From Octopus sinensis (Eukaryota): a DNA stretch of 64,000 nucleotides. Below are positions 1-46,689 of the stretch, piece by piece; position 1 is the first letter of the stretch; each line of letters begins with the position of its first letter. The DNA is taken from assembly GCF_006345805.1 (NCBI RefSeq), contig NW_021828015.1, forward strand, positions 92,468-156,467, in the 5' to 3' direction. The position numbers and the translations under genes were made by a program. The notes under the pieces were generated by a model. The model was given only the letters and a program-made list of their open reading frames with translations, was not told where the DNA came from and ran no database searches.

Positions 1-33
1 ACAATAGCAATGACAATACTACAATTACTACTA

Positions 34-77
<44 letters not shown>

Positions 78-93
78 ATAATAATAATAATAA

Positions 94-129
<36 letters not shown>

Positions 130-429
130 CATGATGATGATAACAATAATAAAAATATTTTGTTTAGTTACTATATATATATATGATGTGTGGGTGTGTA
201 AGCTTATATATATACATATATATAATCATATACATATACATATATATACGTACATATATATATATATATATACACATTTATACACATTTATATGTATATA
301 CACATATACATACATATATATATATACATATATACATACATTTATAAATATGTATAGAAATGCATATATGCATGCATATAATATACACATACACACACAC
401 AGAAACACACATGTGTATGTATATATACA

Positions 430-465
<36 letters not shown>

Positions 466-539
466 CAATGAAACTAATAAGAATGCTCTGTTTATTTAAT
501 ATATACGTACTTATATATATAAAATAATAATAATAGTAC

Positions 540-573
<34 letters not shown>

Positions 574-574
574 C

Positions 575-606
<32 letters not shown>

Positions 607-630
607 TAGTAGTAGTAGTAGTAGTAGTAA
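1..630. repeat. (TAC)n/(AAT)n/(TA)n/(TAG)n microsatellite cluster
   Basis: Direct reading. Confidence 0.9.
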
Positions 631-662
631 AATGGAATGAGGAGGAAAAAGAAAACATGCAC

Positions 663-813
663 CAGGCAATCCCTCTGTGATTATTGCCATTTTGTAATTG
701 ACAGGAGTTAAGTTTCTTGAATCAAGCATTACCATGGGATTTTCCTGATGGAATAATTTTTGGTAATTTCTTCTTTTGCATTTCTTACTTTTTTTTCCAT
801 TTTTTTTTTTTTT
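663..813 (-). CDS. possible further CFAP221 exon ((KKKKNGKKSKKCKRRNYQKLFHQ)ENPMVMLDSRNLTPVNYKMAIITEGLP)
   Basis: The frame is open in phase 0 from either acceptor ttacag|(813) or ttccatcag|(744) to a weak donor CTG|gtgcat (663). 'DS...PV...AII.EGLP' only loosely resembles recalled human 'DSFNSFMLPIDVPAILDALP'. Confidence 0.3.
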
Positions 814-3376
814 CTGTAATTCATTGTTTTAAAACTGTTATTTTACAGAATTTAACAAAATCTCCAATGCTTATTTTTTCCTCTTCTGTCTTTTTGTTTT
901 TTGTTTGTTCTTTTTTAAATGATTAAGAAATACAAAAAAAAAAGCCTGATGTGTAAAAGTAGAACTGAGATAAATTAAAAACCTTTGTTTCTCTTTTATT
1001 GAATACTAATGAAAGAATGTACAAGAAGAATATATAACAGTAAAGAACCACCATTATATCAGATAGACTTTTGAAATTGACTCATGCTCTTTGTAAGGTT
1101 GGGTTTTTTTTCTTTATATTCTATGAGAAGGCACTCAGTGTCATGGCTGAAGTTCACAGTCTGCTAGAAATAGTAACCAAGTTTACCTCTTATGACTCTT
1201 GGAGGCCCTCCAGGACCAGTGAGTTTTGATGTTATTAATTTTCCATATAAAATGATGCAGGTTTGAATTTCTAAAGACATGACTGGATTTGGTAAATGGA
1301 AATTAAAAGAAGCCCATTATGTAAATGTGTATATACACCATTCAAGCATGATCGTTGCCGGTGCCACCTGACTGGCTCCTGTGCCAGTGGCATGTAAAAA
1401 TCACCATTTGAGTGTGGTCGTTACCAGCATTGCCTGTGGCGCATTAAAGCACTCACTACACTCTTGGAGTGGTTGGCGTTAGGAAGGGCATTCAGCTGTA
1501 GAAACTTTGCCAGATCAGATTGGAGTCTGGTGCAGCCTTCTGTCTCACCAGCCCTCAGTCAAACCATCCAATCCATGCCAGCATGGAAAGTGGACGTTAA
1601 ACGATAACGACAACAACAATGACCATCGTCATCATTGGCATTGTCATCATTTAACGTCCATTGTCCATGCTGATGTGGGTTGGTCGGTTTGACCAGGGCC
1701 GGTAAGTTGAGGGACTTCACCAGACTTCAGTCTGATTTGGCATGGTCTCTACAGCTGGATGCCCTTCCTAACACCAACCACTCTAAGAGTGTAACAAGTG
1801 CTTTTACATGTCACTGGCACGGATGTCAGTTGTATGACACCAGTATCTGCCACGACTATGATTTCACTTGGCTTCATAAGTCTTCTTCTCAACCACAGCA
1901 TATTGCCAAAGGTCTCAGTCATCCGAAATTGCCTCCATGAGGCCCAATGCTCAAAAGGTTCTTTTTATGTGCCACTGGCACAGGGTGGTAATTACATGAC
2001 ACCAGCATCGGCCACATTGCCTCCATGAGGCTCAATGCTTGAAAAATGGTTTTATGTGACACTGGCATGGGTATTAGAGAGATGGCACCAGTCTCTGCCA
2101 TGGCAATGATTTCACTTGGCTTGATGGATCTTCTACTCAAGCAGGGCATATCGCTAAAAGTCTTGGTCACTAGTCATTGCATCCATGAGGTCCAGCATTC
2201 AAAGATCATGCTTCACTACCTCGTACCATTTCTTCCTGTGTCCACCTCTTCCACAGGTTCCCTCAACAGTTAGAGATTTGTACTACTTTACACAGCTCTC
2301 CTTGTCCATCCGTGTTCCTTTCTGTGGAAGAGCATAAGCTCAGCTCAAAACATTAAAGACTTTTTCACTTCCTGAGCGTTATACGAATACATCTGTTTGT
2401 TGTCTACACCACCTGTCTTCATCTTTTGTTTTTTTGTGAATTCTCCCTAAATATATATATATATCGTGCTGAGTTGACGTAGGGAATTTTGGAAATGGAT
2501 GTTACTGTCTCCAATTGAAGATTGCAAAGCATGTTTTCTCATGCACAGCATGAAATCAATTGATATTGGGGCATGTAAACTACCTTTAAATTCCGTCCTG
2601 AAGGTAGGCCTATTTTTTGAAGTGTTCATTGTGTTGCTTGTCTGTGTATTTATCATAGGATTTGTGGTCTTTAAAGCTTTTGCTTTCATCTTTGGCAAGC
2701 AGTATTTTTACCCTTCTTTTATTCAAATATATATATATCATCATCATCATCATCATTTAATGTCCGCCTTCAATGGGTGTGTATATATGTATGTAAGTAT
2801 GTGTATACACGCACACACACACACATGGTTGGGTGGTTGGATAAGAAGCTTGCTTCCCAACCACATGTTCATGGGTTCAGTTTCATAATGTGACATGTTG
2901 GGCAGAGTGTTTTCTATAAGCCTCAGGCTGACCAAAGCCTAGTGAGTGGATTAGAAGATTTAGTTGTGTGTGTGGGTATGTGTGTGTTTGTATGTGTGCA
3001 TGTTTGTATGTGTGAGTGTGTGTATGCATATGCATGAGTATATTTGTATATATCTATATATATGCATGAATGTGTGTGTATGTATATGTATGTGTTGTAT
3101 GAGTGAGTCTCCTTGCCTTGATATCATGTAATGGTTGTAAATGAATGGTATTTATTTCCATATTGGTAAAAGGTAAAATGATAAAGGCATGAAGGCACAT
3201 GACTCAGTAGTTAGAGTGTCAGGCCCCAATCATGAGGTAGCAATTTCGATTCCTGGACTGAGATGTGTGTTTGTTCTGGGGTCAATGCAATCGACTCAAT
3301 TCACCCCTGAAATTGATGGGCTTGTGCCAAAATTTGAAATTATTATTACTATGGTTGTAATCTTTTATTATTATTA

Positions 3377-3412
<36 letters not shown>

Positions 3413-4298
3413 GGCAGTGAGCTGGCAGAATCATTAGCATACTGGACAGAATGCTTAGCAGTATTTCATCCATCATTACGTTCTGAGTTCAAATTACACC
3501 AAGGTCAATTCTACAGATTTCTTCAAGGAATACCAGATAAGCCACCCATATCTGGATACAACTCACTCAACAATAACTCACAACTTGAATGGACCATAAA
3601 CAAAACTTGACTTAAAAAGGATTTAGATAATCCTATCAGGTGGTGCTATTAAGTTAGACATGGCCTGGACCAATCTTTGGTTGAAACACATCTAAGTTTT
3701 ATCTAAGATTTTATGATAAATGACATTTTACAGATTTTGTATGATTTTAAATAGTTAAAATGGCTCATTCATGATTTTATTCAATTTTTTTAAAGTTTTC
3801 GTTAAAATTATTCTTATATTGCTTTATCATAATATTTTAAAGAAATAATATTTTAAAAAATTAATGTAGAATCAATCAGCAATTTAAACTTTTTTTTACA
3901 TGTGTATATATATATTATATATATATATATATAATATATATATACTATATATGGGAAAAAATAAGTTCAAAAAAGAACAATTCAAACTTTTTGAGAGGTC
4001 TAAAAAGAGAGAAAAGAATGATTTCTATTAAAGATTCATCATATTCATAAAAAAAACAGCCAGATCAAGTAATAAGAATATGAATAAAGTATTTGAAAAA
4101 TATCATTATAGGTATAAATATACCATAAACAATTATAGAAAAATGGAGGAGAAAAAAGATGTCGAATCAAAATTAGATTTAATACAAAATAGGATTCAAT
4201 ACATACACACGTTTCAAAGGACAATACAAATATGTAAAAAAAAAAAAAATTATATGTCCCCATATAATTAAATTTATGCACACACACATAATTAAATT

Positions 4299-4333
<35 letters not shown>

Positions 4334-4379
4334 TATTCTTTTTACACATATACAAAAAAGAAAAAATATTATATTTTAC

Positions 4380-4514
4380 ATTTTTGTCCAGGAACTTCTT
4401 TTGAGTTAAAGAATTCTGCTTTGGAAACCTGGGTACAGGGCACATATTGAAGTCAGCATTAAATTCAGAATATGATAATGGTACTTCAAATGTCAGAAGG
4501 TTTGGTATTGGATT
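4380..4514 (-). CDS. CFAP221: CFAP221/PCDP1-like internal exon (135 nt, 45 aa NPIPNLLTFEVPLSYSEFNADFNMCPVPRFPKQNSLTQKKFLDKN)
   Basis: It lies inside ORF 4179..4541(-). The acceptor is ttttttccag|AAT and the donor AAT|gtaaaa is weak, so the 3' boundary is less sure. It matches recalled human 'NPNPGLFAVMHPLTYAETLIDYHLCSHPKY...TQKQFL'. Confidence 0.82.
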
Positions 4515-4618
4515 CTGGAAAAAAATTATATCAAAATACAAATGAAGAAAAGGAGATGAAAATGTTCATATCTTTGACTCTCTCTCTCCCTCTCTCTCTC
4601 TCTCTCACACACACACAC

Positions 4619-4671
<53 letters not shown>

Positions 4672-5475
4672 CATATATAGAGAGAGAGATAGAGGGATCA
4701 TATGTGTTGGTACACACACATAAACACATATATTCACAATATACATACATAAAACTCTATCTCCCATCTCACCTCTCTCTCTCATCTTCCACACACATAT
4801 ATACAAACACACACTCATACACATACTGACACAGACATGTATAAACACTGTTTCTTATAAAAAAAATTAAATCAAGAGAAAAAAAAATCAGGAAAAAGAA
4901 AACATGATGTGATCACAGCTGGAATTGTTTTCTATCATGGTTATACCAGATCATAAGTGTCCTGACCTGGTGCTAAAAACATGAACAACCAGCAACAACA
5001 TATTCTATTAACTCTGCAAGAATGATGTTATGTAAGGTTAGCTCCGACAGGATCTGAAATCAAAACAGATTCTGTAAAATGTTTTCGTTTGCTACCATGA
5101 TTCATTCATCCACAAAGGCCCTGAAGATCGCTGTTCAGATTTCAAATCCTGTCAGAGATAACTTATATAACACCATTCTATAGTTGATAAAATAAGTTGC
5201 AGTTAGCTCCAGGTCAATATACTTCAGATCCAGCATGTCTGTGATGAAAGAAATTTCCAGCTGTGACTATACAGTTTTATTTATATATTATTTTTTCAGG
5301 CAGTGTGCACATGCATGAGAGAGAGAGAGAGAAGTAGAAAGAAAAAGGAAGAAATAAAGTTGAAAACATACATACACACACGTGTGTGTATATATATTGT
5401 ATATATAGTGTGTATATATATACTGTGTGGATATATATATATATATATATATTGTGTGTATATATATATATACAT

Positions 5476-5866
5476 ATTCTGAGCGCCTTGTTTCCCTGGG
5501 CATGGATTCACTGAAGCTCCGGCGTTTGGCGACGGACTTGGTAAACACCCACAAAGTTATCAACCACCTCACCAACAACAACACTGAACACCTTTTTGAT
5601 CTCCATGTGTCTAACACACGTGGACATGCCTACAAAGTCAGAAAACAATACAGCTCCCATGACTTTCGGAAACATTTTTTCACGCTCAGAGTTGCTGAAG
5701 CATGGAATAAACTGCCTGCGTCAGTTGTTGACTGCCATGACACTGCATCTTTTAAGGCCCTCATGCTTTCCGAAATCTGCCGAAACTACACCTGATTATA
5801 TATACACTTTAGATGAGTTGTAGTGCACCTGAGCACTGTACACAATTATTATTATTATTATTATTA
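5476..5866 (+). mobile_element. CR1/L2-type LINE 3' end (5'-truncated)
   Basis: ORF 5427..5795 reads ERLVSLGMDSLKLRRLATDL...NTRGHAYKVRKQ...RKHFFTLRVAEAWNKLP, the typical CR1 ORF2 C-terminus. A short 3' UTR and an (ATT)n tail follow. Confidence 0.9.
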
Positions 5867-5884
5867 TAAATATACACATATATA

Positions 5885-6428
5885 TTGGATCATCCCACAA
5901 ATAATACAGTCTTTTTATACTTCTTATATTTTTCAAAATTAAGAAATTTTTTAAAATCTAAAATACACTTTACTTCATTTTCTACAATGCTCTTCCATCT
6001 ATCTGGTAGACTTGCAAGGCCCCTCTTCCAAAATTCACTTGTCTGTGGTGAAAAATAATCTTCCAGTACTGTTCTGACCTCGTCTACAGAATTCATATTT
6101 TTTCCATCCAAATGATTTTGAAGACAGTGGAATAAATGATAATCAGATGGGGAAATGTCCAGCAAATATGGTGAGTCTGGCATTGTTTCCTATTCAAACT
6201 GTTCCAGCCTTTGGAATGTCATCCTCATTGTATGTACTTGTTGGTTTGGATTTGAAAGTTCAGAGCAGACTAAACCTTTTATATCCCACAAAACAAGATA
6301 ACAACACCTTATGTGGGTGAAACCCGTCTTTATCCTGGGGTGCCGGTGTTTGTTCTTTCCCTACCTACTGTCTTCAGCACTTGACATTTTTAAAGAGAAC
6401 CCATTTCTCATCACCAGTCACTATTCAG
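5885..6428 (-). mobile_element. mariner (DD34D) transposase relic with 3' TIR
   Basis: The minus strand gives 'IVTGDEKWV' near 6420 and 'DISPSDYHLF...LQNHLDGK...FWKRGLASLPDRWKSIVENE' (ORF 5890..6183). It is internally deleted and ends at a TA after ...gtgggatgatccaa. Confidence 0.9.
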
Positions 6429-6547
6429 TTCAAAAAATTCATGAGACATGAAAACAAAGAAGAACATATATTCACTCTCTGCATGTGATCAGAGATACAG
6501 AGATGGAGAAAAGAGTGGAAGGGGGACTTTATACACACATAAGTCAC

Positions 6548-6570
6548 ACGTATATATATATAGATAGATA

Positions 6571-6618
<48 letters not shown>

Positions 6619-6644
6619 TAAATAGATAAATAGATAGATAGATG

Positions 6645-6684
<40 letters not shown>

Positions 6685-6685
6685 T
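6548..6685. repeat. (TAGA)n microsatellite
   Basis: Direct reading. Similar arrays lie at 10670-10857, 13145-13205 and 15940-16012. Confidence 0.95.
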
Positions 6686-7248
6686 ACATATTATATATAT
6701 ATATATATATATGTAGGCTAAAGTAGTGAGGAAAGGCAAACAATTAGGCTATGCAAGACAACGACATTTCAATATATTTAATTCAATCTAATATTTAGCG
6801 ACATAACAAACAGTAAATGTTGTACAGTTAAATTTTAGATCGAATTAAATGAATTTAAATGTCCTTGTCTTGCATTGCCTGATTGTTTGTCTTTCCTCGT
6901 GACTTTAACTTATACCCACTGACTAAAAGAGATGTCACTTGTAGCCGCTTTTGAACAAGATAATCACACAACCACAACTTCAACAGAGCAAAGCTGAGCA
7001 AAATCACAGTCATGGCAGATACTGGTGTCACACAAATTGGCACCCATGCCGGTGGCATATAAAGATACCCATTACACTCTCAGAGTGGTTGGCATTAGGA
7101 AGGGCATCCTGTCATAGAAAACCATACCAAATCAGACTCGAGTTTGGTGTAGCCTTCCAGAGTACCAGCCCGGTCAAACCGTCCAACCTATGTCAGTATA
7201 GACAACAGACGTTAAATGATGATAACGATATATACATGTGTGTGTGTA

Positions 7249-7311
<63 letters not shown>

Positions 7312-8207
7312 CTTGCTTGGAATAGTGATGTATCCAACAATGAATATCATAAAACTATAAAATTGAAACTGACAGCATTATACATTTCAAAATTTATTTA
7401 GAATTCAATAATGACACAAATTAACTAATTAATTTAATAAATTTAATTATCTTGTTCTGGGGTTATCATTTATTTTTCTCTTTCCTTTCTTTTCATACTT
7501 CTTTAGCTTTTTGTTTCTTTTTCTTTCTTTCATCAATATATCATAGCTCTTTAGCAAGCATGCACATGGCTGCAAGGTTAAGAAGTTTCTGTCAAAATCA
7601 TATTGTTTAAGGTTCCAGCCCAATGTGAGGTACCTCTTGCCTCATAACAGATGATGCATCAAAATCCATTATAATTTTTTACATAAATCTTCACCTTCTT
7701 TAGTAATTTCTATACTTAACATTTGTTCCTTACAAGGTATTAGACTGGAAGAATTAATTGTCTACCAAACAAAACACCTTTCAATGTTTGGTTTTAGCTC
7801 ATTGCATTCTAAATTCAAATTTCACCAAGGTTAAAAATCGTCTTTCACCCTTCCAAAGTTGATAAAACGAAGCACCTGTCAAGTACTGGTGTGATTCTAC
7901 TCAACTTTAGCACGTTCCTGACTCAGTGGTTAGAACGTTGGGCCCACAATCATGAGGTAGCAAGTTCAATTCCCTGACTGGTCTGTGCATTGTGTTCTTG
8001 AGCAAGACACTTTACTTCATGTTGCTCCAGTTCACGCTGCCGTAGAAATGAGTTGTGACATCACAGGTGCCAAACTGTATCGGTCTTTGCCTTTTCCTGG
8101 GATAACATCAGTGGCATGGAGAGGGAAGCCTGGTATGCATGGGTGACTGCTGGTCTTCCATAAACAACCTTGCCCAGACTTGTGACTCTCTCTTTCTCTC
8201 TCTCTTA

Positions 8208-8254
<47 letters not shown>

Positions 8255-10766
8255 GGACACCAGTCCATTGCAGAGTTAATTACTCATTTACAGCTGTGCA
8301 GGCTAGAGCAATGCTGAGTAAAATGAAGTGTTTTGCTCAAGAACACAGTGCACCACCCGGTTTGGGAAATGAAACCCTGATCCTGAAATTGTAAGTGCAA
8401 CACTGTAACCTTTACATCACATATCTTCACTCCTTATTCCTGAGATTACAAAACAGAGTTGTGCATTTATCTAGTAATTCTCTCTTCAAGAAGGCACTTG
8501 ACAAAATTTAAAATATTTTAATTCTATCAAACAAATTTATCTACTGCCCTCCCACACACACACACACACACTTCTCAATCTTCACAGCCATTCCTACCAA
8601 CCTATGAGAACCACTACAGCCTTAAGACATTTTGTCAAGCATTCTATTATTCTCACCATTCTGTCATTCTTTTCATTGGTTTCAAAGAACAATGGAAGTT
8701 AGCAAATTTCCATACTTTTTAATTCTATGTTTTGATAACCATTATTGTTTGCTTGTAGATCTCTTAAACACATTGTATAAATGTGAACACAAAACTAAAC
8801 CAGGTACAAGCCATAAGATACCTTTTTTTTTTTTCTTTCTTTTTTTTTTTTTTTTTTTTGGCAGGGGGTATTTTTCGTTGGTTTCAATGAACAATGAAAA
8901 TTTCCAAATTTTCCAAACAGGAAAACAAAAATAAAATAAAATAAAATAGAATAAGAGAAATGAACAGTTCCTTTAATTACCATTTCTATCAAAGATTAAT
9001 TCTATGTTGTGATAACTATTATTGTTACATATCCGCATGTTGTATACGACAACAATAACAAGAACCATTGCAGCAGCAACGACAACAGCACAAGTGAACA
9101 AGTTAAAAGAATGCAGTTATTAATTGCTACCCTTTAGCATAATTTCATATTCAATGAAAACACTTCGTATCAAATATGAAGAAAAGCATTTAAACATAAT
9201 AAATAATTTTTAACTGCCAATAACAAAATGAAATCCTACTTGATTTCTGTTATTGTTGCTGTCGTTGTTGTTGTCGGGTGATAGTAGTGGTGGTGTTAGT
9301 GGTGGTGATGGCAATTTGTTTTTAAATTTTTTAATTTTGTTTATTTATGTTATTTTTATTTTATGAGCATTGTTTGTGGTATTTTCAGTTATGTATAGTT
9401 TTAATTATCGTAATTAAATTCATGAATTCCTGTTCTTAACAGTCTAGACCCCTAAGCTCAAGGGGGTTATATTCTGCTTTTTTTTATTTTCATTTTTATT
9501 CCACCCCCCACCCCATTTTTTTTTTTTTTCTTTTGGTACACAGAAGTAATGGGAAGAATGCAAATGGTGCCTGGTAGCTGAGAAGTTAGACAATTGAGAC
9601 GGCAACCATAGATTCAAAATGCAGCTACCAGAATCAATGAGGAAGCCTCTGCATTAATGGTTCTTAACCTGAGCAGCAACATACCACCCACTTCAGGGTA
9701 CCATAAGCTTACAAAGAGCAGGAGACATCCTTGTTGATGGTAAAGTAGTGACCTAGCAAGTTCTTGTTGGATGCTGTTCTGTCATGCCCATAATTAACAC
9801 ATCAGGTTAATTAAACACAACAAATACCAGCCTCATAAAACAATTTAAAAATTAGCAAACAATTAAAACATCATATTTTCTTTATAAGCGAGTGTCTTCC
9901 ATCTGTCCCTGTTGCCAAAGTTATGATCACATGAATGCACCAGCATCAATTGTCAAGCGATTGGTGTGGGTAGGGGGAGGGACAAACATAGATACACACT
10001 CATAAATATGTACACACACACACATATATATATATATGTATATATATAATGGGCTTCTTTCAGTTTCCATCAACCAAATCCACTCAAAAGGCTTTGGTTG
10101 GTTTGCGGTTAGAGTAGAAGACACTACACCAAGGAGCCATGCAGTGGGACTGAACCCAGAACCATATGGTTGGGAAGCTCCTTACCACATGCACACACAC
10201 ATACATGTGTAGATAAATGATGAGTTTCCTTCACTCAGATTGAACCTGAAAACATGTGGTTGGAAAGCAAACACCTTACCACACAGCCATGCCAGTTGTT
10301 TTAAATTTTCAAATTTTTCCTCCAAGTGTTGTTCTATTAAATCATTTTATTTTAGGGCCTCTTATTTTTTTGGCTTCGTTTGTAAATCTTTTATTAATTT
10401 GTTGAGTTGAGATTATATTTCTTTGTTTTATCTTCTTGAAGGTGGCACAGTTAATCCCTTTTAATCCTTTTAAAAGTTTAAATCTGCCTTGATATTTTCT
10501 TGTTGTAGGTCTTCTTTTCATTTTTTTTTTCTAATAAACTAATCTTGTTAGAAATGCTTTCCTTGCCTCAACCAATATGTGTTTGTGTTTATGTGCCTGA
10601 GTACTTGTATATGTGTGGCATCTGTGAATGTGTATATACAATGTTGTGGCTGTGTGTAAGTGTGTATATCTATAGATAAATATCTATATCTATATCTACC
10701 TATCTATCTATCTATCTGTCTATTTATCTATCTTTCTATCAATCTTTATTTCTATCTATCTATCTT

Positions 10767-16396: not shown

Positions 16397-17799
16397 ACAT
16401 ATGGTACAATTATAAACAGGGCAAATTTTAGCCATTTCTCCGCAGATTGCAAACAAGAGTCACAACCTGAATCAATTTTCAAACCTTATTGGGTTCCCAT
16501 CAGAGGCGTCCACATCATTTTGTCAATCTCCAAAGAAACAAGCAGCCAAACTGTTTATTTATATATGCATGTGAGTACGTGTGTTTGTGTGTCTCTCATC
16601 ATCATCATCATCATCATCATCGTTTAACATCTGCCTTCCATGCTAGCATGGGTGGGATGGTTTGACAAGAGCTGGCCAGGCAAAAGCCTGCACTAGACAT
16701 CTGTGATGTTTTGACAGGATTTTTACAGCTGGATGTCCTTCCAAACACCAACCACTCAGCAGAGTGGACTTAGTGCTTTTTGCATGGCACAAGCACAGGT
16801 GAGGTCAGTTTTGGCAAGGTTTTTACAGCTGGACACCCTTCCAAACACCAACCACTTTACAGTGTGGACTGGGTGCTTTTAGGTGGCACCTGCACTAACA
16901 GGATCACCAAGTACTTGCAAGACAAAAAAACTTTTAAGAGGAGAGGAGTGATTGGAAGAGGTGATGAAGAAAAGATTATAGTGAGACAGATACAAGTGTC
17001 TTGCTGTAGAGGAAGTACAAGGTTACTCGGCCAGAGAGAGAAAGATCAGGAATGAAGACAAAAACAGGTGTGCTACCACAAAGAAAATATACAGTTGCCC
17101 AACCTGAGGGAAGTGCAGGAGAAAGAGAAAGTGGAAAACCACAGGATGGAGGTGGTGGAAAAATGTCGGGCATACTCACAAGAAATGGGGATCAGAATAT
17201 AAATGAGATGTTTGAGTAAAGAAGAGAGAGATATAGATAATGGCAAGTGCCAAGGCATACCCTTGAGGTTCAAATGCCATAATATAAGTGACAGGATATT
17301 GCAAAGGGAGTGCGATTAAAGAGTGTGAGTAAATGACGAAAGACCTGGGTATATATAGAGTTGGAGGGGCTACCAGATAGCAATGATACAGAGGAGCAAG
17401 GGTGTGAAGGCAGGATTGGGGAGTGAGAGCTAGGCATAGTGAATGAAGGAGGAAATGCAAGAAAGAGATGTAGATTGGTTTGTTGGAGTAGGGTGAGGAA
17501 AAGTTTTCTTGTTACATGTGGGTGGAACACCCAGGTCAGGGGCTAACAGATGGCAATAATAGAGTGAGAGAAGGTATGTGGATAGAACACACAGGTGGGG
17601 GGGGGGGCAAGCAGAGAGCAGTGATACAGTGGCACTGGGCCAAGAGGATACGATATGTCTATATCTATCTATCAATCTATATGTATGTATGTAATTAGGT
17701 ATATATGTATGTATGTATATATGCATGTAAGTGTATGTGTGTATACATGTATATATGTATGTATATATGTATATATATGTGTGCGTGTGTGAGTGTGTG

Positions 17800-20195: not shown

Positions 20196-20367
20196 TGGTT
20201 TCATATTTTGCTACAACAGCAGAAATTTTGGGGGAGGGGATGAGTTGATTATATTGACCCCCCGTGTTCAACTGGTACTTTTTTAATTGACCCCAAAAGG
20301 ATGAAAGACAAAGTCAACCTAGGTGGAATTTGAATGCAGAACATAAAGACAGACAAAAATGCCACTT

Positions 20368-21859: not shown

Positions 21860-22375
21860 TGGCAAGCTGGCAGAATCGTTAGGTGAAATGCTTAGTGGTA
21901 ATAGGTCTGTCTTTACATTCTGAGTTCAAATTCCACCGAGATCAACTTTGCTTTTCATCCTTTCAGGGTCGATAGATTAAGTACCATTTGCGTACTGTGG
22001 TCGAATCAATCGATTGGCACCCTCCCCAAAACAAATTTCAGGCCTTGTGCCTAAAGTAGAAAAGATTTTTATCGCTATTATCATTATTATTATTGCTATT
22101 ATTACTATTATTATTATTATTATCATTATTATTATTATTGTTATTATTATTATTATTATTATTATTAAGGCTGCAAGACAGCAGAATTGTTAGCATGCTG
22201 GGCAAAATGCTTAGTGGTATTTTATCTGTCTTTACATTCAAATTCCACCAAGGTTGACTTTGCCTTTCATCCTTTTGGGGTCAATAAATTAAGATAAAGT
22301 TGTGTACTGGGGTCAATCTAATCGACTGGCCCCCACCCCCAAAATTTTCGGGCCTTGTACCTAGTGTATAAAAGA
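21860..22375 (+). mobile_element. two SINE family B copies separated by (TAT)n
   Basis: Copies at ~21860-22065 and ~22168-22375 carry the gcctttcatcc...gggtc.ata...aagtacc domain. Confidence 0.8.
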
Positions 22376-22536: not shown

Positions 22537-22755
22537 AAACATGAACTCTGCCGAATTCTTCAAATGATGCTGCATAAAGTCTGGCATCTTAAATTTCATT
22601 ACAGTTTCATCACTGACACTGCTGTCCATTATTGGTGGAGATAACCTCTTTGCAGTGCCAGATTTTTCGAGGGTTTCCGGGTGCTTTTTCTTGGGTGGTT
22701 TACCTTTCTTTTTGTATTTCAAAGATGAATCGACGGCGGCCAGAGACGTCCTTGC
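22537..22755 (-). CDS. CFAP221: CFAP221/PCDP1-like internal exon (219 nt, 73 aa ARTSLAAVDSSLKYKKKGKPPKKKH...MKFKMPDFMQHHLKNSAEFMF)
   Basis: It lies inside ORF 22483..22896(-). The donor is TTT|gtaagt. The acceptor is the first AG after a ~105-nt AG-free pyrimidine-rich tract (catcaag|GCA). Phase 0-0. The terminal 'EFMF' joins 'NPIP' as human 'LYVF|NPNP'. Confidence 0.8.
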
Positions 22756-25989: not shown

Positions 25990-26091
25990 CGTCATGGGCG
26001 TGTACCTTTCAGGATCTGGGTGCAAGTAGGAGACAGCTGCTTCGTGTATATCGCATGGTTCATATTCTTGTAGTTTGTAATACTGAGGTAC
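25990..26091 (-). CDS. CFAP221: CFAP221/PCDP1-like internal exon (102 nt, 34 aa VPQYYKLQEYEPCDIHEAAVSYLHPDPERYTPMT)
   Basis: Acceptor tttccctag|GTA and strong donor ACG|gtgagt, phase 0-0. It matches recalled human 'VPQLYKIKRYQPFSVHKSSTSYRPQKL'. It is too short for the ORF track. Confidence 0.85.
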
Positions 26092-29103: not shown

Positions 29104-30343
29104 AATATTACACCTGCCTAAGGTGGCAACCTGGCAGAATCGTTAGAACACAGGGCGTAATGCTTAGTGGTATTTCGTCTGTCTTTACATTCTGAGTTCA
29201 AATTCCGCCAAGGTCAACTTTGCCGTTCATCTTTTCAGGGTCAATAAATTAAGTACCAGTTGCATACTGGGGTCAATCTAATTGACTGGCCCTCACCTCC
29301 CCAAAAATTTCAGGCCTTGTGCCTAGAACAAAAAAGAATATTGCACCTGCTTAAGGTAGTGAGCTGGCAGAATTGTTAGCATGCTGGATGAAATGCTTAG
29401 CGGTATTTCACCCATTGCGAGCTGGCAGAAACGTTAGCACGTCAGGCGAAATGCTTAGCGGTATTTCGTCTGCCGTTATGTTGTGAGTTCAAATTCCGCC
29501 GAGGTCGACTTTGCCTTTCATCCTTTCGAGGTCGATAAATTAAGTACCAGTTACGCACTGGGGTCGATGTATTCGACTTAATACCTATGTCTGTCCTTGT
29601 TTGTCCCCTCTGTGTTTAGCCCCTTGTGGGTAATAAAGAAATAGGTATTTCACCCATTGCTATATTCTGAGTTCAAATTACACTGAGGTCGACTTTGCCT
29701 TTCATCCTTTCAGGTCAATAAATTAAATATCAGTGAAACACTGGGGTCAATGTAATCAACTAGTCCCCTCCCCTCAAATTTCAGGCCTTATGCCTTTAGT
29801 AGAAAGGAATATTACACCTGCCTGTAAAGTATTAAGCACCAGTTGCATACTGGGGTCAATCTAATTGACTGGCCCTCACCTCCCCAAAAATTTCAGGCCT
29901 TGTGCCTAGAACTGAAAAGAATATTGCACCTGCTTAAGGTAGTGAGTTCGCAGAACCATTAGCATGGTAAAATGCTTAGTGGTATTTCATCTGTTTTTAC
30001 ATTCAGAGTTCAAATTTCACCAGGGTCGACTTTCCCTTTCATCCTTTTGAGGTCAATAAAATAAATATTATTTGAACATTGGGGTCTATGTTATTGATGT
30101 AAACCCTCTCCCAAAATTGCTGGTCTCATGCCAAAATTTGATACCAATGTTACATCAGCATGCAAGGTAACATGATGGCAGAATTGTTAGCATGCTATGC
30201 AAAATGCTTAGCAGTATTTTGTACGCCTTTACATTTTGAGTTCAAATTCCACCAAGGCTGAATTTGCCTTTCATCCTTTTGGGGTCAACAAAATAAGTAC
30301 CATTTGAAAGTTGAATTCTATGTAATTGACTTGATCCCTCCCC
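29104..30343 (+). mobile_element. tandem array of SINE family B (gagctggcagaatcgttag...ctttgcctttcatcctttcggggtcgataaattaagtacc)
   Basis: At least five head-to-tail units share a spacer aatatt(a/g)cacctgc(c/t)taaggt. A younger copy is nested at 29419-29643. Confidence 0.85.
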
Positions 30344-31104
30344 TTAACCTTTTCATTTCCAACCCAGCTGAAACAGGCTCTGGCTCTGAGTACAAATGTC
30401 TTGTTTGCATAAGTTTTGAATTAAAATCTTGCACCAAACCTTAGTCACAATTTATGTTCCTAGCACTAGCTGAATGATAACTATGTTATTTTACTAAATT
30501 TTTTGTTATATTGAAAATTAATTGAAAGAAACAGAGAGCACCTCAAAATAAATACAGTAACAAAAAAGTTAACCCTTTCATTACCAACCTGGCTGAAACT
30601 GGTTTTGGATCTGTAGTATAAATGTCTTGTTTTCATAAGTTCTGAATTGAAATCTTCCACCAAACCTTAGTCACAATTTATGTTCCTAACACTAGCTTAA
30701 TGATAACTAAGTTATTTTACTAAATTCTTTGATATATTCAGAATAAATTGAAAGAAATACAGATCATCTCAAAATAAATACAGTTACAAAAGGGTTAAAG
30801 TCACCATGATATTTTTAGATCACCTCTAGCTCTGTAGTACAAATGTCTTGTTTTCATAAGTTCTGAATTGAAATCTTCCACCAAACCTTAGTCACAATTT
30901 ACGTTCCTAACTCTAGCTTAATGATAATTAAGTTATTTTACTAAATTCTTTGTTAAAATCTCCCAGCAAACCTTAGTCACAATTTAGGTTCCTAACACTA
31001 GCTTAATGATAACTAAGTTATTTTATTAAATTCTTTGTTATATTTAAAATTAATAGAAAGAAACAAAGACCATCTCAAGAGAAAAACAGTAACAAAAGGA
31101 TTAA
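30344..31104 (+). mobile_element. head-to-tail array of three piggyBac-like MITEs
   Basis: The ~225-bp units begin TTAACC(C)TTT and end AAA(G)GGTTAA, sharing TTAA at 30344, 30569 and 30795. The third unit is rearranged and ends at the TTAA at 31101. Confidence 0.7.
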
Positions 31105-37859: not shown

Positions 37860-38066
37860 TTATTTACCACAGGGGGCTAAATACAGAGGGGACAAACAAA
37901 GGAATTAAGTCAATTACATTGACCCGGTGCATAGATGGTACTTATTTAATCACCCCGAAAGGATGAAAGGCAAAGTCGACCTCAGCGGAATTTGAACTCA
38001 GAACATAACGGCAGATGAAATACCGCTGAGCATTTCGCCTGGTATGCTAATGATTCTGCCAGCTCG
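37860..38066 (-). mobile_element. SINE family B (subfamily with gtccttgtttgtcccctctgt..ttagcccc tail)
   Basis: Reverse copy related to the nested element at 29419-29643. Confidence 0.8.
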
Positions 38067-42695: not shown

Positions 42696-44249
42696 CTCAG
42701 ATTTTGATAAGCAACCTTTTTTCATATCAGCCAACTTGAATTCATTGGTCATCCTGTGATACAAATTCCCTGTTTAAAGTGTTTTAAATTGCAACCTTCC
42801 ATCAAAAATTTTTTGTTCAATTAAGTTTCAAACAACAACTTAATAATGACAAAGCTGTTTTATTAAATTCTTCCCTGTTTATAAAATCAGTTGAAAACAC
42901 ATGAAATGTGTTCAACAGAAATACTAAAATGTTAATAATTTTGACACCAACCTGTCTAAGACCACCCCTGGTTCTGTGATACAAAACTTCCTGTTTCAAA
43001 GTGATCTAAAAACCTTCCATCAAAATTTCAAGTTAATTCATGTCCCAGACACCAATTTAATGACAAAGCTATTTTGGTAACTTCCTCATGCTGTTCAAAA
43101 TTAATTCAATCAAAGGCAATGTATTTCTACAGAAATATGGCAACTAAAGAGTTAAGTTTCATCTCTAATTATTAAAAACAGGAGCTGGCAGAATTGGTAG
43201 AGCAGCAGGTAAAATACTTGTGGCATTTTTATTACACTACATGTCTTTAATTCTGTGTTCAACTTCTACCAGGTGCAACTTAACCTTTTCTCATTCCATA
43301 GTGAGGCAGGTGGGGGTGGAGGGTGTTGAAAAATTAAATACCAGTTATGTAATGAGGTATATCTTGGCTGACTTCATACAATCTGAAAATATGAGGCATT
43401 CTGCCAATGTGATAAATTAATCAATTGTTGATTTCTAATACAGGCACATCATCATCATCACCATCTTTGAACATCCCCTTTTCCATGGACCATATAGAAT
43501 TTGACGCAGAAGATTTTCTATGGTTGGATGCCCTCCCTGTCCCAACCTTCACCTGTTTCTAAGTAAGGTGACATCTTCTTATGGCCAGACATGTTTTCAG
43601 AGAAGATTGGAACATATGATGTCCAGATAAGGACACACTGACACACACACACACACACACACAATGGCTTCTTTCAGTTTCCATCTATCAAATTCACTCA
43701 CAAGGGTTTGGTTGGCCTGTAGCTACATCAGAAGATCTTTGGTCAAGGTACCTCATAATGGGACTGAACCTGAGATCAAGTGTTTGGGAAGTAAACACAC
43801 TTGCATATGGTCGTACATTCTGAGAGACAAAGCTAATTAAGATATACTCCAATATATTACCAGTACTTATTTCCTCTCTCCCTACCCCAGAAGAACAGGC
43901 AAAATCCACCCCACTAGATTTGAACCCTGAGTCTAAAGATATTTAATTAAATGCTGTAAAGCATTTTGTAACAATATTTTACAGATCCACCATTCTTTGT
44001 GGTATCAAAGAATGATTTCTAATTCTGGCACAGGGCCAGCAAATTCAGAGGTGGAGGCTATTTCATTACATCAGCCCCAGTACTCAACTGGTACTTTTAT
44101 GATTATAATTACTTTTTTTTCTTCTTCTTTCTTCAAATTTTCTTCCATTTTTCGCTGTGTGTTTTCCATACACTTAGGGCAGAGAAGCTCATTGTATGCA
44201 TTCCCAGATTACACACACAAATTCACAGGTAAAATATGTATATAAAAAA

Positions 44250-44480
44250 AATTAATAAATAAATAAATTCATGAATGGATGTTGCTTATCACAGCAATAA
44301 TGCTCTTCTCAGTACATGAGTTGTTCTAGTTAACATGATTTTTTGCACTTCCTATAGGGATAGTAAGCCTGGTATCACTTTCAAATAGGTTTCAGTACCT
44401 TTTTTTAACATTCCTAGAGATCCTACAATCACTGGTACTGTAGTCGCCTTGAGATGCCACATTTTTTCAATTTCTATATT
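44250..44480 (-). mobile_element. second R4/Dong-like fragment
   Basis: EIEKMWHLKATTVPVIVGSLGMLKKG (end of ORF 44352..44834). Its 5' side abuts an (AAT)n run. Confidence 0.75.
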
Positions 44481-44593
44481 ATTAATATTATTATTATTAT
44501 TATTATTATTATTGTGCTGGTGCCATGCACAAATCATCCAAGTACACTCTGCAGAGTGGTTGGCGTTAGGAAGGGCATCCGACCATAGAAACC

Positions 44594-44629
<36 letters not shown>

Positions 44630-44899
44630 AAAGATAATGATGATGATGGCGATGATGATGATGGTGGTGGTGGTGGTGATGGTGATGATGATGACGATGA
44701 GGGTGATGATAATGATGGTAATGATGATGATGATGATGGTAGTGATGACCCTGAAAGGACAAAAGGCAAAGCTGACTTCGGTAGAAGTTGAAACGAACAC
44801 ATAAAGCGCTGAAAACAAGCATTTTGTCCGACATGCGAACAGCTCTGCCAGCTCGCTGCCTTATGTGTTAACAAATATCAGAAAGGTAAATCTACAAAC

Positions 44900-44980
44900 C
44901 AGCAAGTCTTCATAGGAAACTGTTTTTCTTGAAATGAATTCCTTGTGGCTTAGAGGAACTTGAGAGAAAGTGTCATAAAT
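44900..44980 (-). CDS. CFAP221: CFAP221/PCDP1-like internal exon (81 nt, 27 aa IYDTFSQVPLSHKEFISRKTVSYEDLL)
   Basis: Minus-strand acceptor tttcttttattgcattacag|ATT and donor CTG|gtttgt, phase 0-0. It aligns by eye to human CFAP221 'APDGLGLVPIKSSEVQIKQSYSFFNLQ' (recalled), which directly precedes the VPQ motif of the next exon. Confidence 0.75.
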
Positions 44981-45360
44981 CTGTAATGCAATAAAAGAAA
45001 TAAAATAAAATAAAATAAATGAATAAAAGATAACACCATGATACCATAAAAAAACAAGCATTACAGTAAATGAGACATTCCTAAAAATAGCTTCCTGTGT
45101 TATTAGATTATTGTACATTATTAATGCTTTTCTTTTATCTTTTACTGTTTTAGTCACTGGACTGAGGCCATCCTGGGGCAAAATCTTGAAAGGTTTCGTC
45201 AAAGAAATCAACCACCATACAGATTCTATAGGTTGCTATTACGAAAGTGCTAAGTTTGGCAACATAACACTGGTTGTTAGGTAGCGGGTGGATGGGAGAG
45301 CTTATATATATATATATATAATAAATCTCTAAACGAGGTATAAACAGTAACTGCACGACA

Positions 45361-45471
45361 ATGTGAGGTATACTTGCCATCTCAATATGGCTAACCACTA
45401 AGGGTGGGTGTTACAAGCTACAGTAACACCCACCCTTAGTGGTTAGCCATATTGAGATGGCAAGTATACCT

Positions 45472-45476
<5 letters not shown>
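45361..45476. repeat. perfect 54-bp inverted repeat, 8-nt loop
   Basis: atgtgaggtatacttgccatctcaatatggctaaccactaagggtgggtgttac-aagctaca-exact reverse complement. Confidence 0.95.
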
Positions 45477-45512
<36 letters not shown>

Positions 45513-46689
45513 TCACCATCATCATCATCGTATAACGTCCGTTCTCCATGCTAGCATGGGTTGGACGGTTCGACCGGGGATCCGGGAAGCCAGAAGGCTG
45601 CACCAGGCTCTGGTCTTATCTGGCAATGTTTCTACAGCTGGATGCCCTTCCTAATGCCAACCACTCCGTGAGTGTAGTGGGTGCTTTTTACGTATCTCCA
45701 GTCCAGGGGTCCTGGCATCTGCCGGGTGCCAGTCATAGGATTGGTTAAACACACACGCACACACATATACATGAGACTTCTACACAATTTCCAGCTACCA
45801 AATTCATTCATGAGGTACCAATCAGGCTGGAACTATTATAGATGACACTTGCCTAAGTTTCTAGATGGTGGAATTGACACTAAAACCGCAATATTGCAAA
45901 GCAAGATCCTTAACCACATGGCCATCTATAAAGCATTGTTACAAAATGCTTTGCAGCATTTAATTACTTATCTTTAGACTCAGGGTTCAAATCTAGTGGG
46001 GTGGATTTTGCCTGTTCTTCTTCTGGGGTAGGGAGAGAGGAAATAAGTACCAGTAATATATTGGAGTATATCTTAATTAGCTTTGCCTCTCAGAATGTAC
46101 GACTGTATGCAAGTGCGGCTGTGTGGTTAAGAATTTTACTTCCCAAACATGATCTCAGGTTCAGTCCCATTATGAGGGACTTCTTTTCAGTTTCCATCTA
46201 TCAAATCCACTCATAAAGCTTTGGTCAGCCTGAGGCTATAATAGAAGACACTTACCCAAGGTGCTATGCAGTGGGACTGAACCCTTTTATTTTACTTTTT
46301 ACCTAAAAGCTGTCCATCAATGCTGACGCTGACACTGTCTTCTAAGAGTCTTATCCTCTTTTGTTTTGTTTTTTTACCCTTTAGCATTCAGATTGGTCTG
46401 TCAAATATAATGTTAATTAATTCACACTGTTCTGAAATTAATCATACTCTATCTCGTCACTTTGAGATTTAGATGATGTGATTGTTGGCTTTTAGAGTTT
46501 CTTTGCAGTGTAGGTATGAGAGGCCTGACCTGGTCAGTTTCAACATTAAACAAGAAGAATATTTAAGTCTGATATGGCCGGTCTGAATGCCAAAGAGTTA
46601 AAGGTGCTCATATTGATGTAAGTTGCAGTAATTTGGCTGCTATTTCTGACAACTGAAGCAACCACAAAAAAAAAAAAATTCACACATCT

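What the first reader, a model, noticed from the sequence alone, without database searches (positions are those of the whole stretch)
43750..46168. Locus-specific ~95% inverted duplication brackets the 81-nt in-frame CFAP221 exon almost symmetrically
Seen: 43798-43975 is the reverse complement of 45935-46115 (8 substitutions and one 3-nt indel in 178 bp), with ~45 bp more homology beyond a ~20-nt indel. The arms share the same decayed SINE-B/SINE-A junction and private mutations, so they are a local duplication rather than two random SINEs. The exon sits ~925 and ~955 nt from the arms. Established: reverse-complementary intronic matches flanking an exon promote exon skipping and back-splicing and are ADAR substrates, and coleoids edit RNA heavily. 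Inference: this is an RNA stem that loops out a symmetric exon with a weak GTTTGT donor, a possible editing-sensitive splicing switch or circRNA source.
Basis: partly seen in the sequence, partly recalled or inferred. Interest (0 to 1): 0.7.

Follow-up and report, generated by a model that had tools for sequence, protein, structure and literature searches.

The report
Young inverted SINE duplication around CFAP221 exon
Two nearly identical, oppositely oriented ~250-bp copies of a SINE-derived segment sit about 0.9 kb either side of a conserved 81-nt CFAP221 exon in an octopus genome and should form a long double-stranded RNA stem in the pre-mRNA. This is the octopus equivalent of the inverted Alu pairs known in primates, and nothing here shows that it regulates the exon.

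Summary
43748-43986 is the reverse complement of 45924-46180: 225 matches, 12 substitutions and 4 indels.

- **Arm anatomy:** each arm is a decayed copy of an old dispersed tRNA-like SINE ("SINE-B"), a ~30-nt spacer and the first 50-65 nt of a second SINE ("SINE-A").
- **Local origin:** this junction occurs only in the two arms. They score 219-229 bits against a core profile, versus 27 or less for the other 11 SINE-B matches that pass E<=0.01.
- **Exon:** 44900-44980 (minus strand) is real. An O. bimaculoides protein model contains it (25 of 27 residues identical). That protein aligns to solved CFAP221, and the splice sites, including the weak GTTTGT donor, are conserved.
- **Age:** both arms are absent from the orthologous O. 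bimaculoides locus. Arm divergence (5.1%) is below orthologous divergence (8.1%), so the duplication is lineage-specific.
- **RNA:** the arms are predicted to form a 229-bp stem (-386 kcal/mol) enclosing the exon.

Such a stem is probably an ADAR hyper-editing substrate. A splicing-switch role is untested, and circRNA from an 81-nt exon is unlikely. I file it as a new member of a known kind, of modest interest.

The parts
43748..43986 (-). Left arm (3' arm on the minus-strand pre-mRNA). It comprises the SINE-A2 head (43748-43796), then a ~30-nt spacer plus a SINE-B copy (43798-43986), with the SINEs in minus orientation.
   Evidence: alignment to the right arm; SINE-A head alignment; SINE-B family membership
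45924..46180 (+). Right arm (5' arm on the pre-mRNA). It comprises a SINE-B copy plus spacer (45924-46115), then the SINE-A2 head (46116-46180), which is cut off after ~65 nt.
44900..44980 (-). 81-nt, phase 0-0 exon of a CFAP221 homologue (IYDTFSQVPLSHKEFISRKTVSYEDLL). The acceptor is ttattgcattacag| and the donor is CTG|gtttgt.
   Evidence: translation; O. bimaculoides XP_014774269.1 carries it, 25/27 identical, spliced directly to the next exon; aligns to CFAP221 chain 9ijj_L at about residues 546-572; exon and both splice sites conserved
43987..45923 (-). 1,937-nt loop enclosed by the stem. It holds the exon, microsatellites, a LINE remnant, SINE-C fragments, SINE-A3 and a perfect 54-nt palindrome.
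43633..43747 (-). Continuation of the left SINE-A2 (body plus CA microsatellite) beyond the duplicated segment. It shows that the left copy holds an uninterrupted SINE-A.
45747..45924 (-). SINE-A3, whose 5' end abuts the inner end of the right arm. It is shared with O. bimaculoides (L001 32585-32751, 90%), so it predates the right arm.
46181..46284 (-). Unrelated SINE-A fragment abutting the outer end of the right arm. It is 76% identical to the left SINE-A2 body and 90% identical to another SINE-A copy.
   Evidence: (D2)
25990..26091 (-). Next downstream CFAP221 exon (VPQYYKLQEYEPCDIHEAAVSYLHPDPERYTPMT). It defines an 18.8-kb downstream intron.
22537..22755 (-). Following CFAP221 exon (73 codons, ending ...NSAEFMF|gtaagt).

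Best explanation
A 240-257-bp segment was duplicated in inverted orientation about 1.9 kb away. The segment consists of an old SINE-B copy, a short spacer and the 5' head of a SINE-A inserted next to it. The duplication happened in the lineage of the window's octopus species after it split from O. bimaculoides. The two copies lie in the two very long introns (18.8 kb and more than 19 kb) that flank a conserved 81-nt CFAP221 exon. When the gene is transcribed (minus strand), the copies are predicted to pair into a ~229-bp, nearly perfect double-stranded RNA stem closing a 1.9-kb loop that holds the exon. The most likely consequence is heavy A-to-I editing and unwinding by ADAR, as for other neighbouring inverted repeats in octopus. 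Some increase in skipping of the in-frame exon is possible. No selected regulatory role is indicated, and it is most probably a neutral by-product of repeat turnover. Shown: the repeat, its anatomy, the exon, the absence from the sister locus, and the predicted energetics. Inferred: the duplication mechanism, duplex formation in vivo, editing, and any splicing effect.
For: Repeat and statistics. Arm anatomy: the SINE-A head starts at about the family's 5' end right after the core. The core belongs to a dispersed SINE-B family: nhmmer gave 12 weaker matches, 11 of them at E<=0.01 (9 in the window, 2 in L001), all scoring 27 bits or less against 219-229 bits for the arms. The spacer-plus-SINE-A-head junction occurs only in the two arms, across 64 kb of window and ~43 kb of O. 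bimaculoides. Two TG/CA doublet differences indicate independent CpG decay in both copies, so these are real, diverged genomic copies. Exon and gene. Lineage specificity: the collinear orthologous locus L001 lacks both arms. The right arm lies in a non-homologous 1.19-kb block without Ns, and the left arm in a 1.35-kb block missing from L001. Arm divergence is 5.06% against 8.1% orthologous divergence over 20.7 kb. RNA: cofold -386 kcal/mol against -108+-6 for shuffles; 229 arm-arm pairs in the minimum-energy fold of a 2.7-kb pre-mRNA segment; the next best local duplex is -169 kcal/mol. Literature: the arm pair meets the criterion that Porath et al. used for octopus dsRNA potential (>95% identity over at least 40 bp, reverse-oriented, within 2 kb). 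Octopus has the highest such potential (0.44% of random loci) and the strongest hyper-editing signal (PMC5625713). Most octopus editing is intronic or in 3'UTRs, it rarely alters splice sites, and circRNAs are low (PMC9699675).
Against: No transcriptome data could be reached, so duplex formation, editing and neutrality are unverified. Genome-wide copy number of the composite is unknown. The left-arm block may be ancestral and deleted in O. bimaculoides: its boundary at 43245 falls inside a third SINE-B copy. In that case only the right arm is demonstrably young. In primates, inverted Alu pairs close to an exon do raise skipping (PMC2533698, PMC13019944). A weak-donor, 81-nt exon in ~19-kb introns is the kind of exon that could be sensitive to this.
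Confidence: 0.6

Rival explanations
1. One reading: the stem is a working, possibly editing-sensitive splicing switch. It would loop out the weak-donor exon to give an in-frame CFAP221 isoform lacking 27 residues and/or an exonic circRNA.
For: The stem is very stable, straddles the exon and is the closest pair, 913 and 943 nt away. The donor is weak (CTG|GTTTGT) and the exon length is a multiple of three. Inverted Alu pairs shift exons towards skipping, the effect grows with proximity, and deleting one arm reduces skipping (PMC2533698; PMC13019944).
Against: The exon, with the same weak donor, is included in the O. bimaculoides model, which lacks the arms. The 27 residues align to a conserved stretch of mammalian CFAP221 (VP...Y..L.VPQ.YK..Y.P), which suggests a constitutive exon. 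The arms are young, not conserved, and already accumulating indels. Octopus editing very rarely alters splice sites and circRNAs are low (PMC9699675). Exons of 400 nt or less circularised poorly or not at all in reporters (PMC4201285). ADAR editing tends to unwind such stems (PMC5625713).
Confidence: 0.1
2. The arms are two independent insertions of a young, mobile composite element (SINE-B plus a transduced SINE-A head) that is dispersed in the genome. On this view they are not a local duplication.
For: Both components are abundant SINEs in this window: at least 9 further SINE-B and about 15 SINE-A copies. Both arms end at the 5' end of the SINE-B unit. Only ~107 kb of octopus sequence could be searched.
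Against: No third copy of the junction or of a close (>70% identical) core was found in the window or in L001. The right copy is truncated at its 3' side (SINE-A head only), whereas the left runs on into a complete SINE-A. Retrotransposed copies are normally truncated at the 5' side. No target-site duplications or tails were recognisable. Two copies 1.9 kb apart is what a local event predicts.
Confidence: 0.2
3. Assembly artefact: a spurious fold-back or chimeric join created one arm.
For: Repeat-rich, microsatellite-rich sequence. A suspicious, perfectly identical 54-nt palindrome lies inside the loop.
Against: The arms differ by 12 substitutions and 4 indels, including CpG-decay doublets on opposite strands, whereas artefactual duplicates are identical. 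Each arm has different, coherent flanks: a complete SINE-A2 on the left and the ancestral SINE-A3 on the right.
Confidence: 0.03

Closest known systems
Inverted Alu pairs flanking exons in primates (Lev-Maor et al. 2008, PMC2533698; Lee et al. 2026, PMC13019944)
   Same: SINE-derived reverse-complementary sequences lie in the introns on either side of an exon, within about 1 kb, and are predicted to form a long intramolecular RNA duplex that loops the exon out. The pair is lineage-specific and absent from a related species.
   Different: The repeats are octopus tRNA-like SINEs, not Alu. The two arms are copies of one composite locus that share a non-SINE spacer and a SINE/SINE junction, not two independent family members, so they pair far better (95% over ~190 bp). 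No splicing, cross-linking or editing evidence exists here.
Inverted-repeat-driven exon circularisation (Liang & Wilusz 2014, PMC4201285)
   Same: Complementary intronic repeats bracket the exon's splice sites, and repeats of 30-40 nt are already sufficient in reporters.
   Different: The exon is 81 nt, and reporter exons of 400 nt or less circularised poorly or not at all. Octopus circRNA levels are low overall (PMC9699675).
Hyper-edited intronic dsRNA from neighbouring inverted repeats in octopus (Porath et al. 2017, PMC5625713)
   Same: It meets the criterion that paper used to measure dsRNA potential (>95% identity over at least 40 bp, reverse-oriented, within 2 kb). It is intronic and in a transcribed gene.
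   Different: Editing at this locus was not observed. It is one of what must be a very large number of such loci: 0.44% of random octopus positions qualify.

Membership tests
Exon-flanking inverted-repeat RNA duplex (inverted-Alu type) that promotes exon skipping | Reverse-complementary sequences, one in each intron flanking the exon | tested here: met
   The arms are at 43748-43986 and 45924-46180, and the exon at 44900-44980.
Exon-flanking inverted-repeat RNA duplex (inverted-Alu type) that promotes exon skipping | Both arms lie within one pre-mRNA, inside introns of the same gene | tested here: met
   Exon mapping with the O. bimaculoides protein and locus collinearity. The next exon is at 25990-26091 and the previous exon lies beyond position 64000. 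Transcription itself is inferred.
Exon-flanking inverted-repeat RNA duplex (inverted-Alu type) that promotes exon skipping | The arm-arm duplex is energetically favoured over competing pairings | tested here: met
   -386 kcal/mol against -169 or weaker for other local pairs. There are 229 arm-arm base pairs in the minimum-energy fold of 2.7 kb.
Exon-flanking inverted-repeat RNA duplex (inverted-Alu type) that promotes exon skipping | The exon is skipped in vivo and the skipping depends on the arms | not testable with these tools
   No RNA-seq access. Indirect evidence against a requirement: the exon is included in the O. bimaculoides model, which lacks the arms.
Inverted-repeat-driven single-exon circRNA | Exon long enough for efficient back-splicing | tested here: not met
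   The exon is 81 nt. Exons of 400 nt or less circularised poorly or not at all in a reporter (PMC4201285).
Inverted-repeat-driven single-exon circRNA | Back-splice junction reads | not testable with these tools
   No transcriptome data were reachable.
ADAR hyper-editing substrate (long near-perfect dsRNA from neighbouring inverted repeats) | More than 95% identity over at least 40 bp to a reverse-oriented sequence within 2 kb (criterion of PMC5625713) | tested here: met
   Gapless blocks of 98 nt at 95% and 94% identity, with arms 1,937 nt apart.
ADAR hyper-editing substrate (long near-perfect dsRNA from neighbouring inverted repeats) | Clusters of A-to-G mismatches in RNA reads over the arms | not testable with these tools
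   No RNA reads available.
Local segmental (inverted) duplication, as opposed to two members of a dispersed repeat family | The copies share sequence beyond the repeat unit (spacer and junction with a second element) | tested here: met
   A shared ~30-nt spacer plus the SINE-A2 head, with the same junction in both arms.
Local segmental (inverted) duplication, as opposed to two members of a dispersed repeat family | The copies are much closer to each other than to any other family member | tested here: met
   nhmmer scores 219-229 bits for the arms against 27 bits or less for the 12 other matches.
Local segmental (inverted) duplication, as opposed to two members of a dispersed repeat family | No further copies of the composite elsewhere in the genome | tested here: inconclusive
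   None found in 64 kb of window plus ~43 kb of O. bimaculoides, and none in metagenome contigs. The rest of the genome was not available.
CFAP221 (PCDP1) gene | Sequence homology of the encoded protein to CFAP221, with the exon boundaries used in an orthologue | tested here: met
   The three window exons match XP_014774269.1 at 79% in one stretch. That protein hits 'Cilia- and flagella-associated protein 221' (9ijj_L) at E=2.9e-5, residues 443-598, and this is the only significant hit. The raw window exons alone gave no PDB or Pfam hit.

The most novel reading that the evidence does not exclude
The young inverted duplication has turned an ancestrally constitutive CFAP221 exon into a lineage-specific, ADAR-tunable cassette exon. 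Stem formation would favour skipping of 27 conserved residues of a central-apparatus protein, and hyper-editing, which varies with tissue and temperature in cephalopods, would melt the stem and restore inclusion. O. bimaculoides, which lacks the arms, would serve as a natural control.
Probability: 0.07. Interest if true: 0.55.

Novelty: new member of a known kind. Interest (0 to 1): 0.25.

Why it matters
If the stem does alter splicing, it would be a clean cephalopod example of a repeat-born RNA structure changing exon use between two closely related Octopus species. It would also link the unusually high dsRNA load and ADAR activity of octopus to splicing, a link that a transcriptome-wide survey did not find (PMC9699675). 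As it stands, the locus mainly illustrates how SINE turnover creates near-perfect intronic dsRNA in octopus genes. It could serve as a test locus because a related species lacks both arms.

Tried and rejected
- **Protein word-index searches:** searches with the exon peptide, with a three-exon concatenate and with P0001 itself returned nothing beyond P0001. No second Octopus species could therefore be compared.
- **Raw window exons:** they gave no PDB or Pfam hit. Gene identity came only through the O. bimaculoides protein.
- **RNA-family scans:** Rfam at gathering thresholds and ARAGORN found nothing in the window. The SINE heads are too decayed to register as tRNAs.
- **Metagenome scan:** an exact-pattern scan of metagenome contigs for the arm core gave 0 hits, which is uninformative.
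- **Exact-product look-ups:** look-ups of the right-arm ORF and of the exon-containing ORF gave no records, so there is no independent assembly or transcript evidence.
- **Arms as terminal inverted repeats of one transposon carrying the exon:** rejected. The exon and ~650 nt around it are orthologous in O. bimaculoides without the arms.
- **The arm core as unique sequence:** rejected. My blastn-based impression was overturned by nhmmer, which shows it is a diverged member of an old SINE family.
- **Retro-origin of one arm (twin priming, or Pol III read-through with 3' transduction):** considered and not favoured. The left SINE-A continues in register past the homology end and the right copy is truncated at its 3' side.
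- **In-place inversion of the SINE-A2 body to explain 46181-46284:** rejected. That fragment is only 76% identical to the left body and 90% identical to another family copy.
- **Gene conversion between two older copies:** not favoured, because the shared spacer and junction lie outside the SINE-B unit.
Full report
**Observation**

The inverted repeat is present as described. The repeat finder gives two gapless blocks, 43798-43895/46018-46115 (95%) and 43889-43986/45924-46021 (94%). blastn joins 43748-43986 with 46180-45924 at E about 1e-88. A global alignment has 225 matches, 12 substitutions (5.06%) and four indels of 2, 13, 4 and 3 nt. The arms end 913 nt and 943 nt from the exon at 44900-44980.

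Two of the differences are TG/CA doublets (43808-9 and 43861-2). This is the signature of independent CpG decay in each copy, so these are two real, separately evolving genomic copies and not an assembly duplicate.

**Anatomy of the arms**

- **Outer part.** The outer 50-65 nt of each arm (43748-43796 and 46116-46180) is the tRNA-like head (A and B boxes) of a SINE with about 15 copies in the window, here called SINE-A. In an alignment of family heads, the arm copy begins at about the family's 5' end, right where it meets the core.
- **Asymmetry.** On the left, this SINE-A continues in register through its body to a CA microsatellite (to 43633). On the right, it stops at 46180 against an unrelated SINE-A fragment (46181-46284). 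That fragment is 76% identical to the left body and 90% identical to another copy.
- **Core.** The ~190-nt core looked unique by blastn. An nhmmer profile of the two cores then found 12 weaker matches, 11 of them at E<=0.01: nine in the window, including a cluster at 29.1-30.3 kb and one at 43214-43374, and two in the O. bimaculoides locus. An alignment of the strongest of these shows a common tRNA-like SINE, here called SINE-B.
- **Relative similarity.** The arms score 219-229 bits against that profile, and every other copy scores 27 bits or less.
- **Shared junction.** The arms also share a ~30-nt spacer and the junction with the SINE-A head, which no other copy has.

It rests on only ~107 kb of octopus DNA.

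**The exon and the gene**

- **Searches that failed.** Word-index protein searches failed, as did PDB and Pfam searches with the raw exons.
- **O. bimaculoides match.** A full HMMER scan with three candidate minus-strand exons found one protein, P0001. It is 79% identical over the whole 140-residue query in one stretch. It is Octopus bimaculoides XP_014774269.1, 'uncharacterized LOC106871988'.
- **CFAP221 identity.** P0001 matches one solved chain significantly: 9ijj_L, 'Cilia- and flagella-associated protein 221', E=2.9e-5, residues 443-598. The exon aligns to about residues 546-572, in a motif shared with the mammalian protein.
- **Exon map.** In the window the exons are 44900-44980, 25990-26091 and 22537-22755, all on the minus strand. 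The upstream exon lies just beyond position 64000. The flanking introns are therefore more than 19 kb and 18.8 kb.
- **Splice sites.** The acceptor and the weak CTG|GTTTGT donor are identical in both species.

**Comparison with O. bimaculoides**

The orthologous locus L001 (GCA_001194135.2, CM046618.1:6871811-6928950) is collinear with the window from 64000 down to about 4700.

- **Right arm.** SINE-A3, which abuts the right arm's inner end, is shared between the species (w45925-45759 matches L32585-32751 at 90%). Upstream of it, the window's 1.19 kb containing the right arm is replaced in L001 by 1.05 kb of unrelated, N-free sequence.
- **Left arm.** It lies in a 1,349-nt block (43246-44594) that is missing in L001, where a microsatellite directly abuts the homologue of 43245. 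That boundary falls inside a third SINE-B copy, which hints at a deletion in O. bimaculoides and not an insertion here. The left arm may therefore be the older, parental copy.
- **Other copies.** No core-like copy close to the arms exists anywhere in L001.
- **Dating.** Substitution divergence between the arms (5.06%) is lower than orthologous divergence (8.1% over 20.7 kb). This places the duplication after the species split.

**RNA consequences (predicted)**

- On the minus-strand transcript the arms cofold at -386 kcal/mol, against -108+-6 for shuffles.
- They form 229 arm-arm pairs in the minimum-energy structure of a 2.7-kb segment.
- The next best local duplex is far weaker, at -169 kcal/mol.
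- Inverted pairs are common here. Fifteen pairs of at least 80 nt lie within 5 kb of each other in the window. Thirty-two of 73 inverted pairs in the two introns straddle this exon. This pair is the closest and the only one above 90% identity.

**Interpretation**

Inverted Alus flanking exons are enriched at skipped exons, more so when close to the exon, and deleting one arm reduces skipping (PMC2533698, PMC13019944).

- **Editing.** Octopus has the highest genomic potential for near-perfect dsRNA (0.44% of random loci by a criterion this pair meets) and the strongest hyper-editing signal. Such editing unwinds the duplexes (PMC5625713).
- **Splicing switch and circRNA.** The literature weighs against this part for octopus. 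Most octopus editing is intronic or in 3'UTRs, it very rarely alters splice sites, and circRNAs are low overall (PMC9699675).
- **Exon size.** Exons of 400 nt or less circularised poorly or not at all in a reporter (PMC4201285). This makes an 81-nt circle unlikely.
- **Arms not required.** The exon is used in O. bimaculoides without the arms, and it encodes a conserved stretch of the protein.

I therefore rate the structure as real and young, probably an ADAR substrate, possibly a mild modifier of inclusion, and most likely neutral.

**Limits**

No transcriptome, no whole genome of the window's species and no third Octopus species could be reached. The origin mechanism (template switching or another route) is not resolved. 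Only a 4-5-nt 'AGAT' overlap is visible at the inner junction.

Noticed in passing
window 45361-45414 / 45423-45476: A perfect 54-nt palindrome with an 8-nt loop (100% complementary; RNA hairpin -106 kcal/mol), with (TA)n tracts on both sides. It is unique in the window and has no match in the O. bimaculoides locus. It sits 381 nt upstream of the exon in transcript sense, inside the large loop. It is either a very recent event or an assembly artefact.
   Followed up: partly
window 29137-30347 (also 22186-22320, 20260-20362, 37934-38037, 43214-43374): Diverged copies of the same SINE-B family as the arm core, including a cluster of five or six copies within 1.2 kb. Tandem Repeats Finder did not call the cluster a tandem array.
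   Followed up: partly
window 44554-44592 / 45628-45666: A second, shorter inverted pair (39 nt, 87% complementary) made of SINE-C fragments. It lies closer to the exon (about 310 and 650 nt) and is nested inside the main stem.
   Followed up: no
window 43246-44594 versus L001 33604-33792: A 1,349-nt block containing the left arm is missing in O. bimaculoides, where a (GAT)n microsatellite abuts the homologue of 43245. The boundary cuts a SINE-B copy, which suggests a deletion in O. bimaculoides and not an insertion here.
   Followed up: partly
window 16490-16642 (minus); L001 48168-48326: The last 53 residues of the O. bimaculoides model XP_014774269.1 map to a stretch that overlaps a SINE-C copy and carries two in-frame stops in the window. 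The model looks like a truncated C-terminal fragment of CFAP221 with a repeat-derived terminal exon. The neighbouring upstream model in L001 (positions 1-8848, weak Cep192_D3 and Ig_CFAP65 Pfam hits) is probably the N-terminal part of the same gene.
   Followed up: partly
window 5893-6189 (minus) and 5409-5792 (plus): Open frames that look like a mariner-type transposase C-terminus and a LINE reverse-transcriptase C-terminus. This is judged by eye from the translations and was not tested against any library.
   Followed up: no
window 44895-44913 with 44934-44952: In the minimum-energy fold of the 2.7-kb pre-mRNA segment, the weak donor site is paired into a local hairpin with exon sequence. 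This is a prediction only. The region is almost invariant between the two species, so no covariation test is possible.
   Followed up: no
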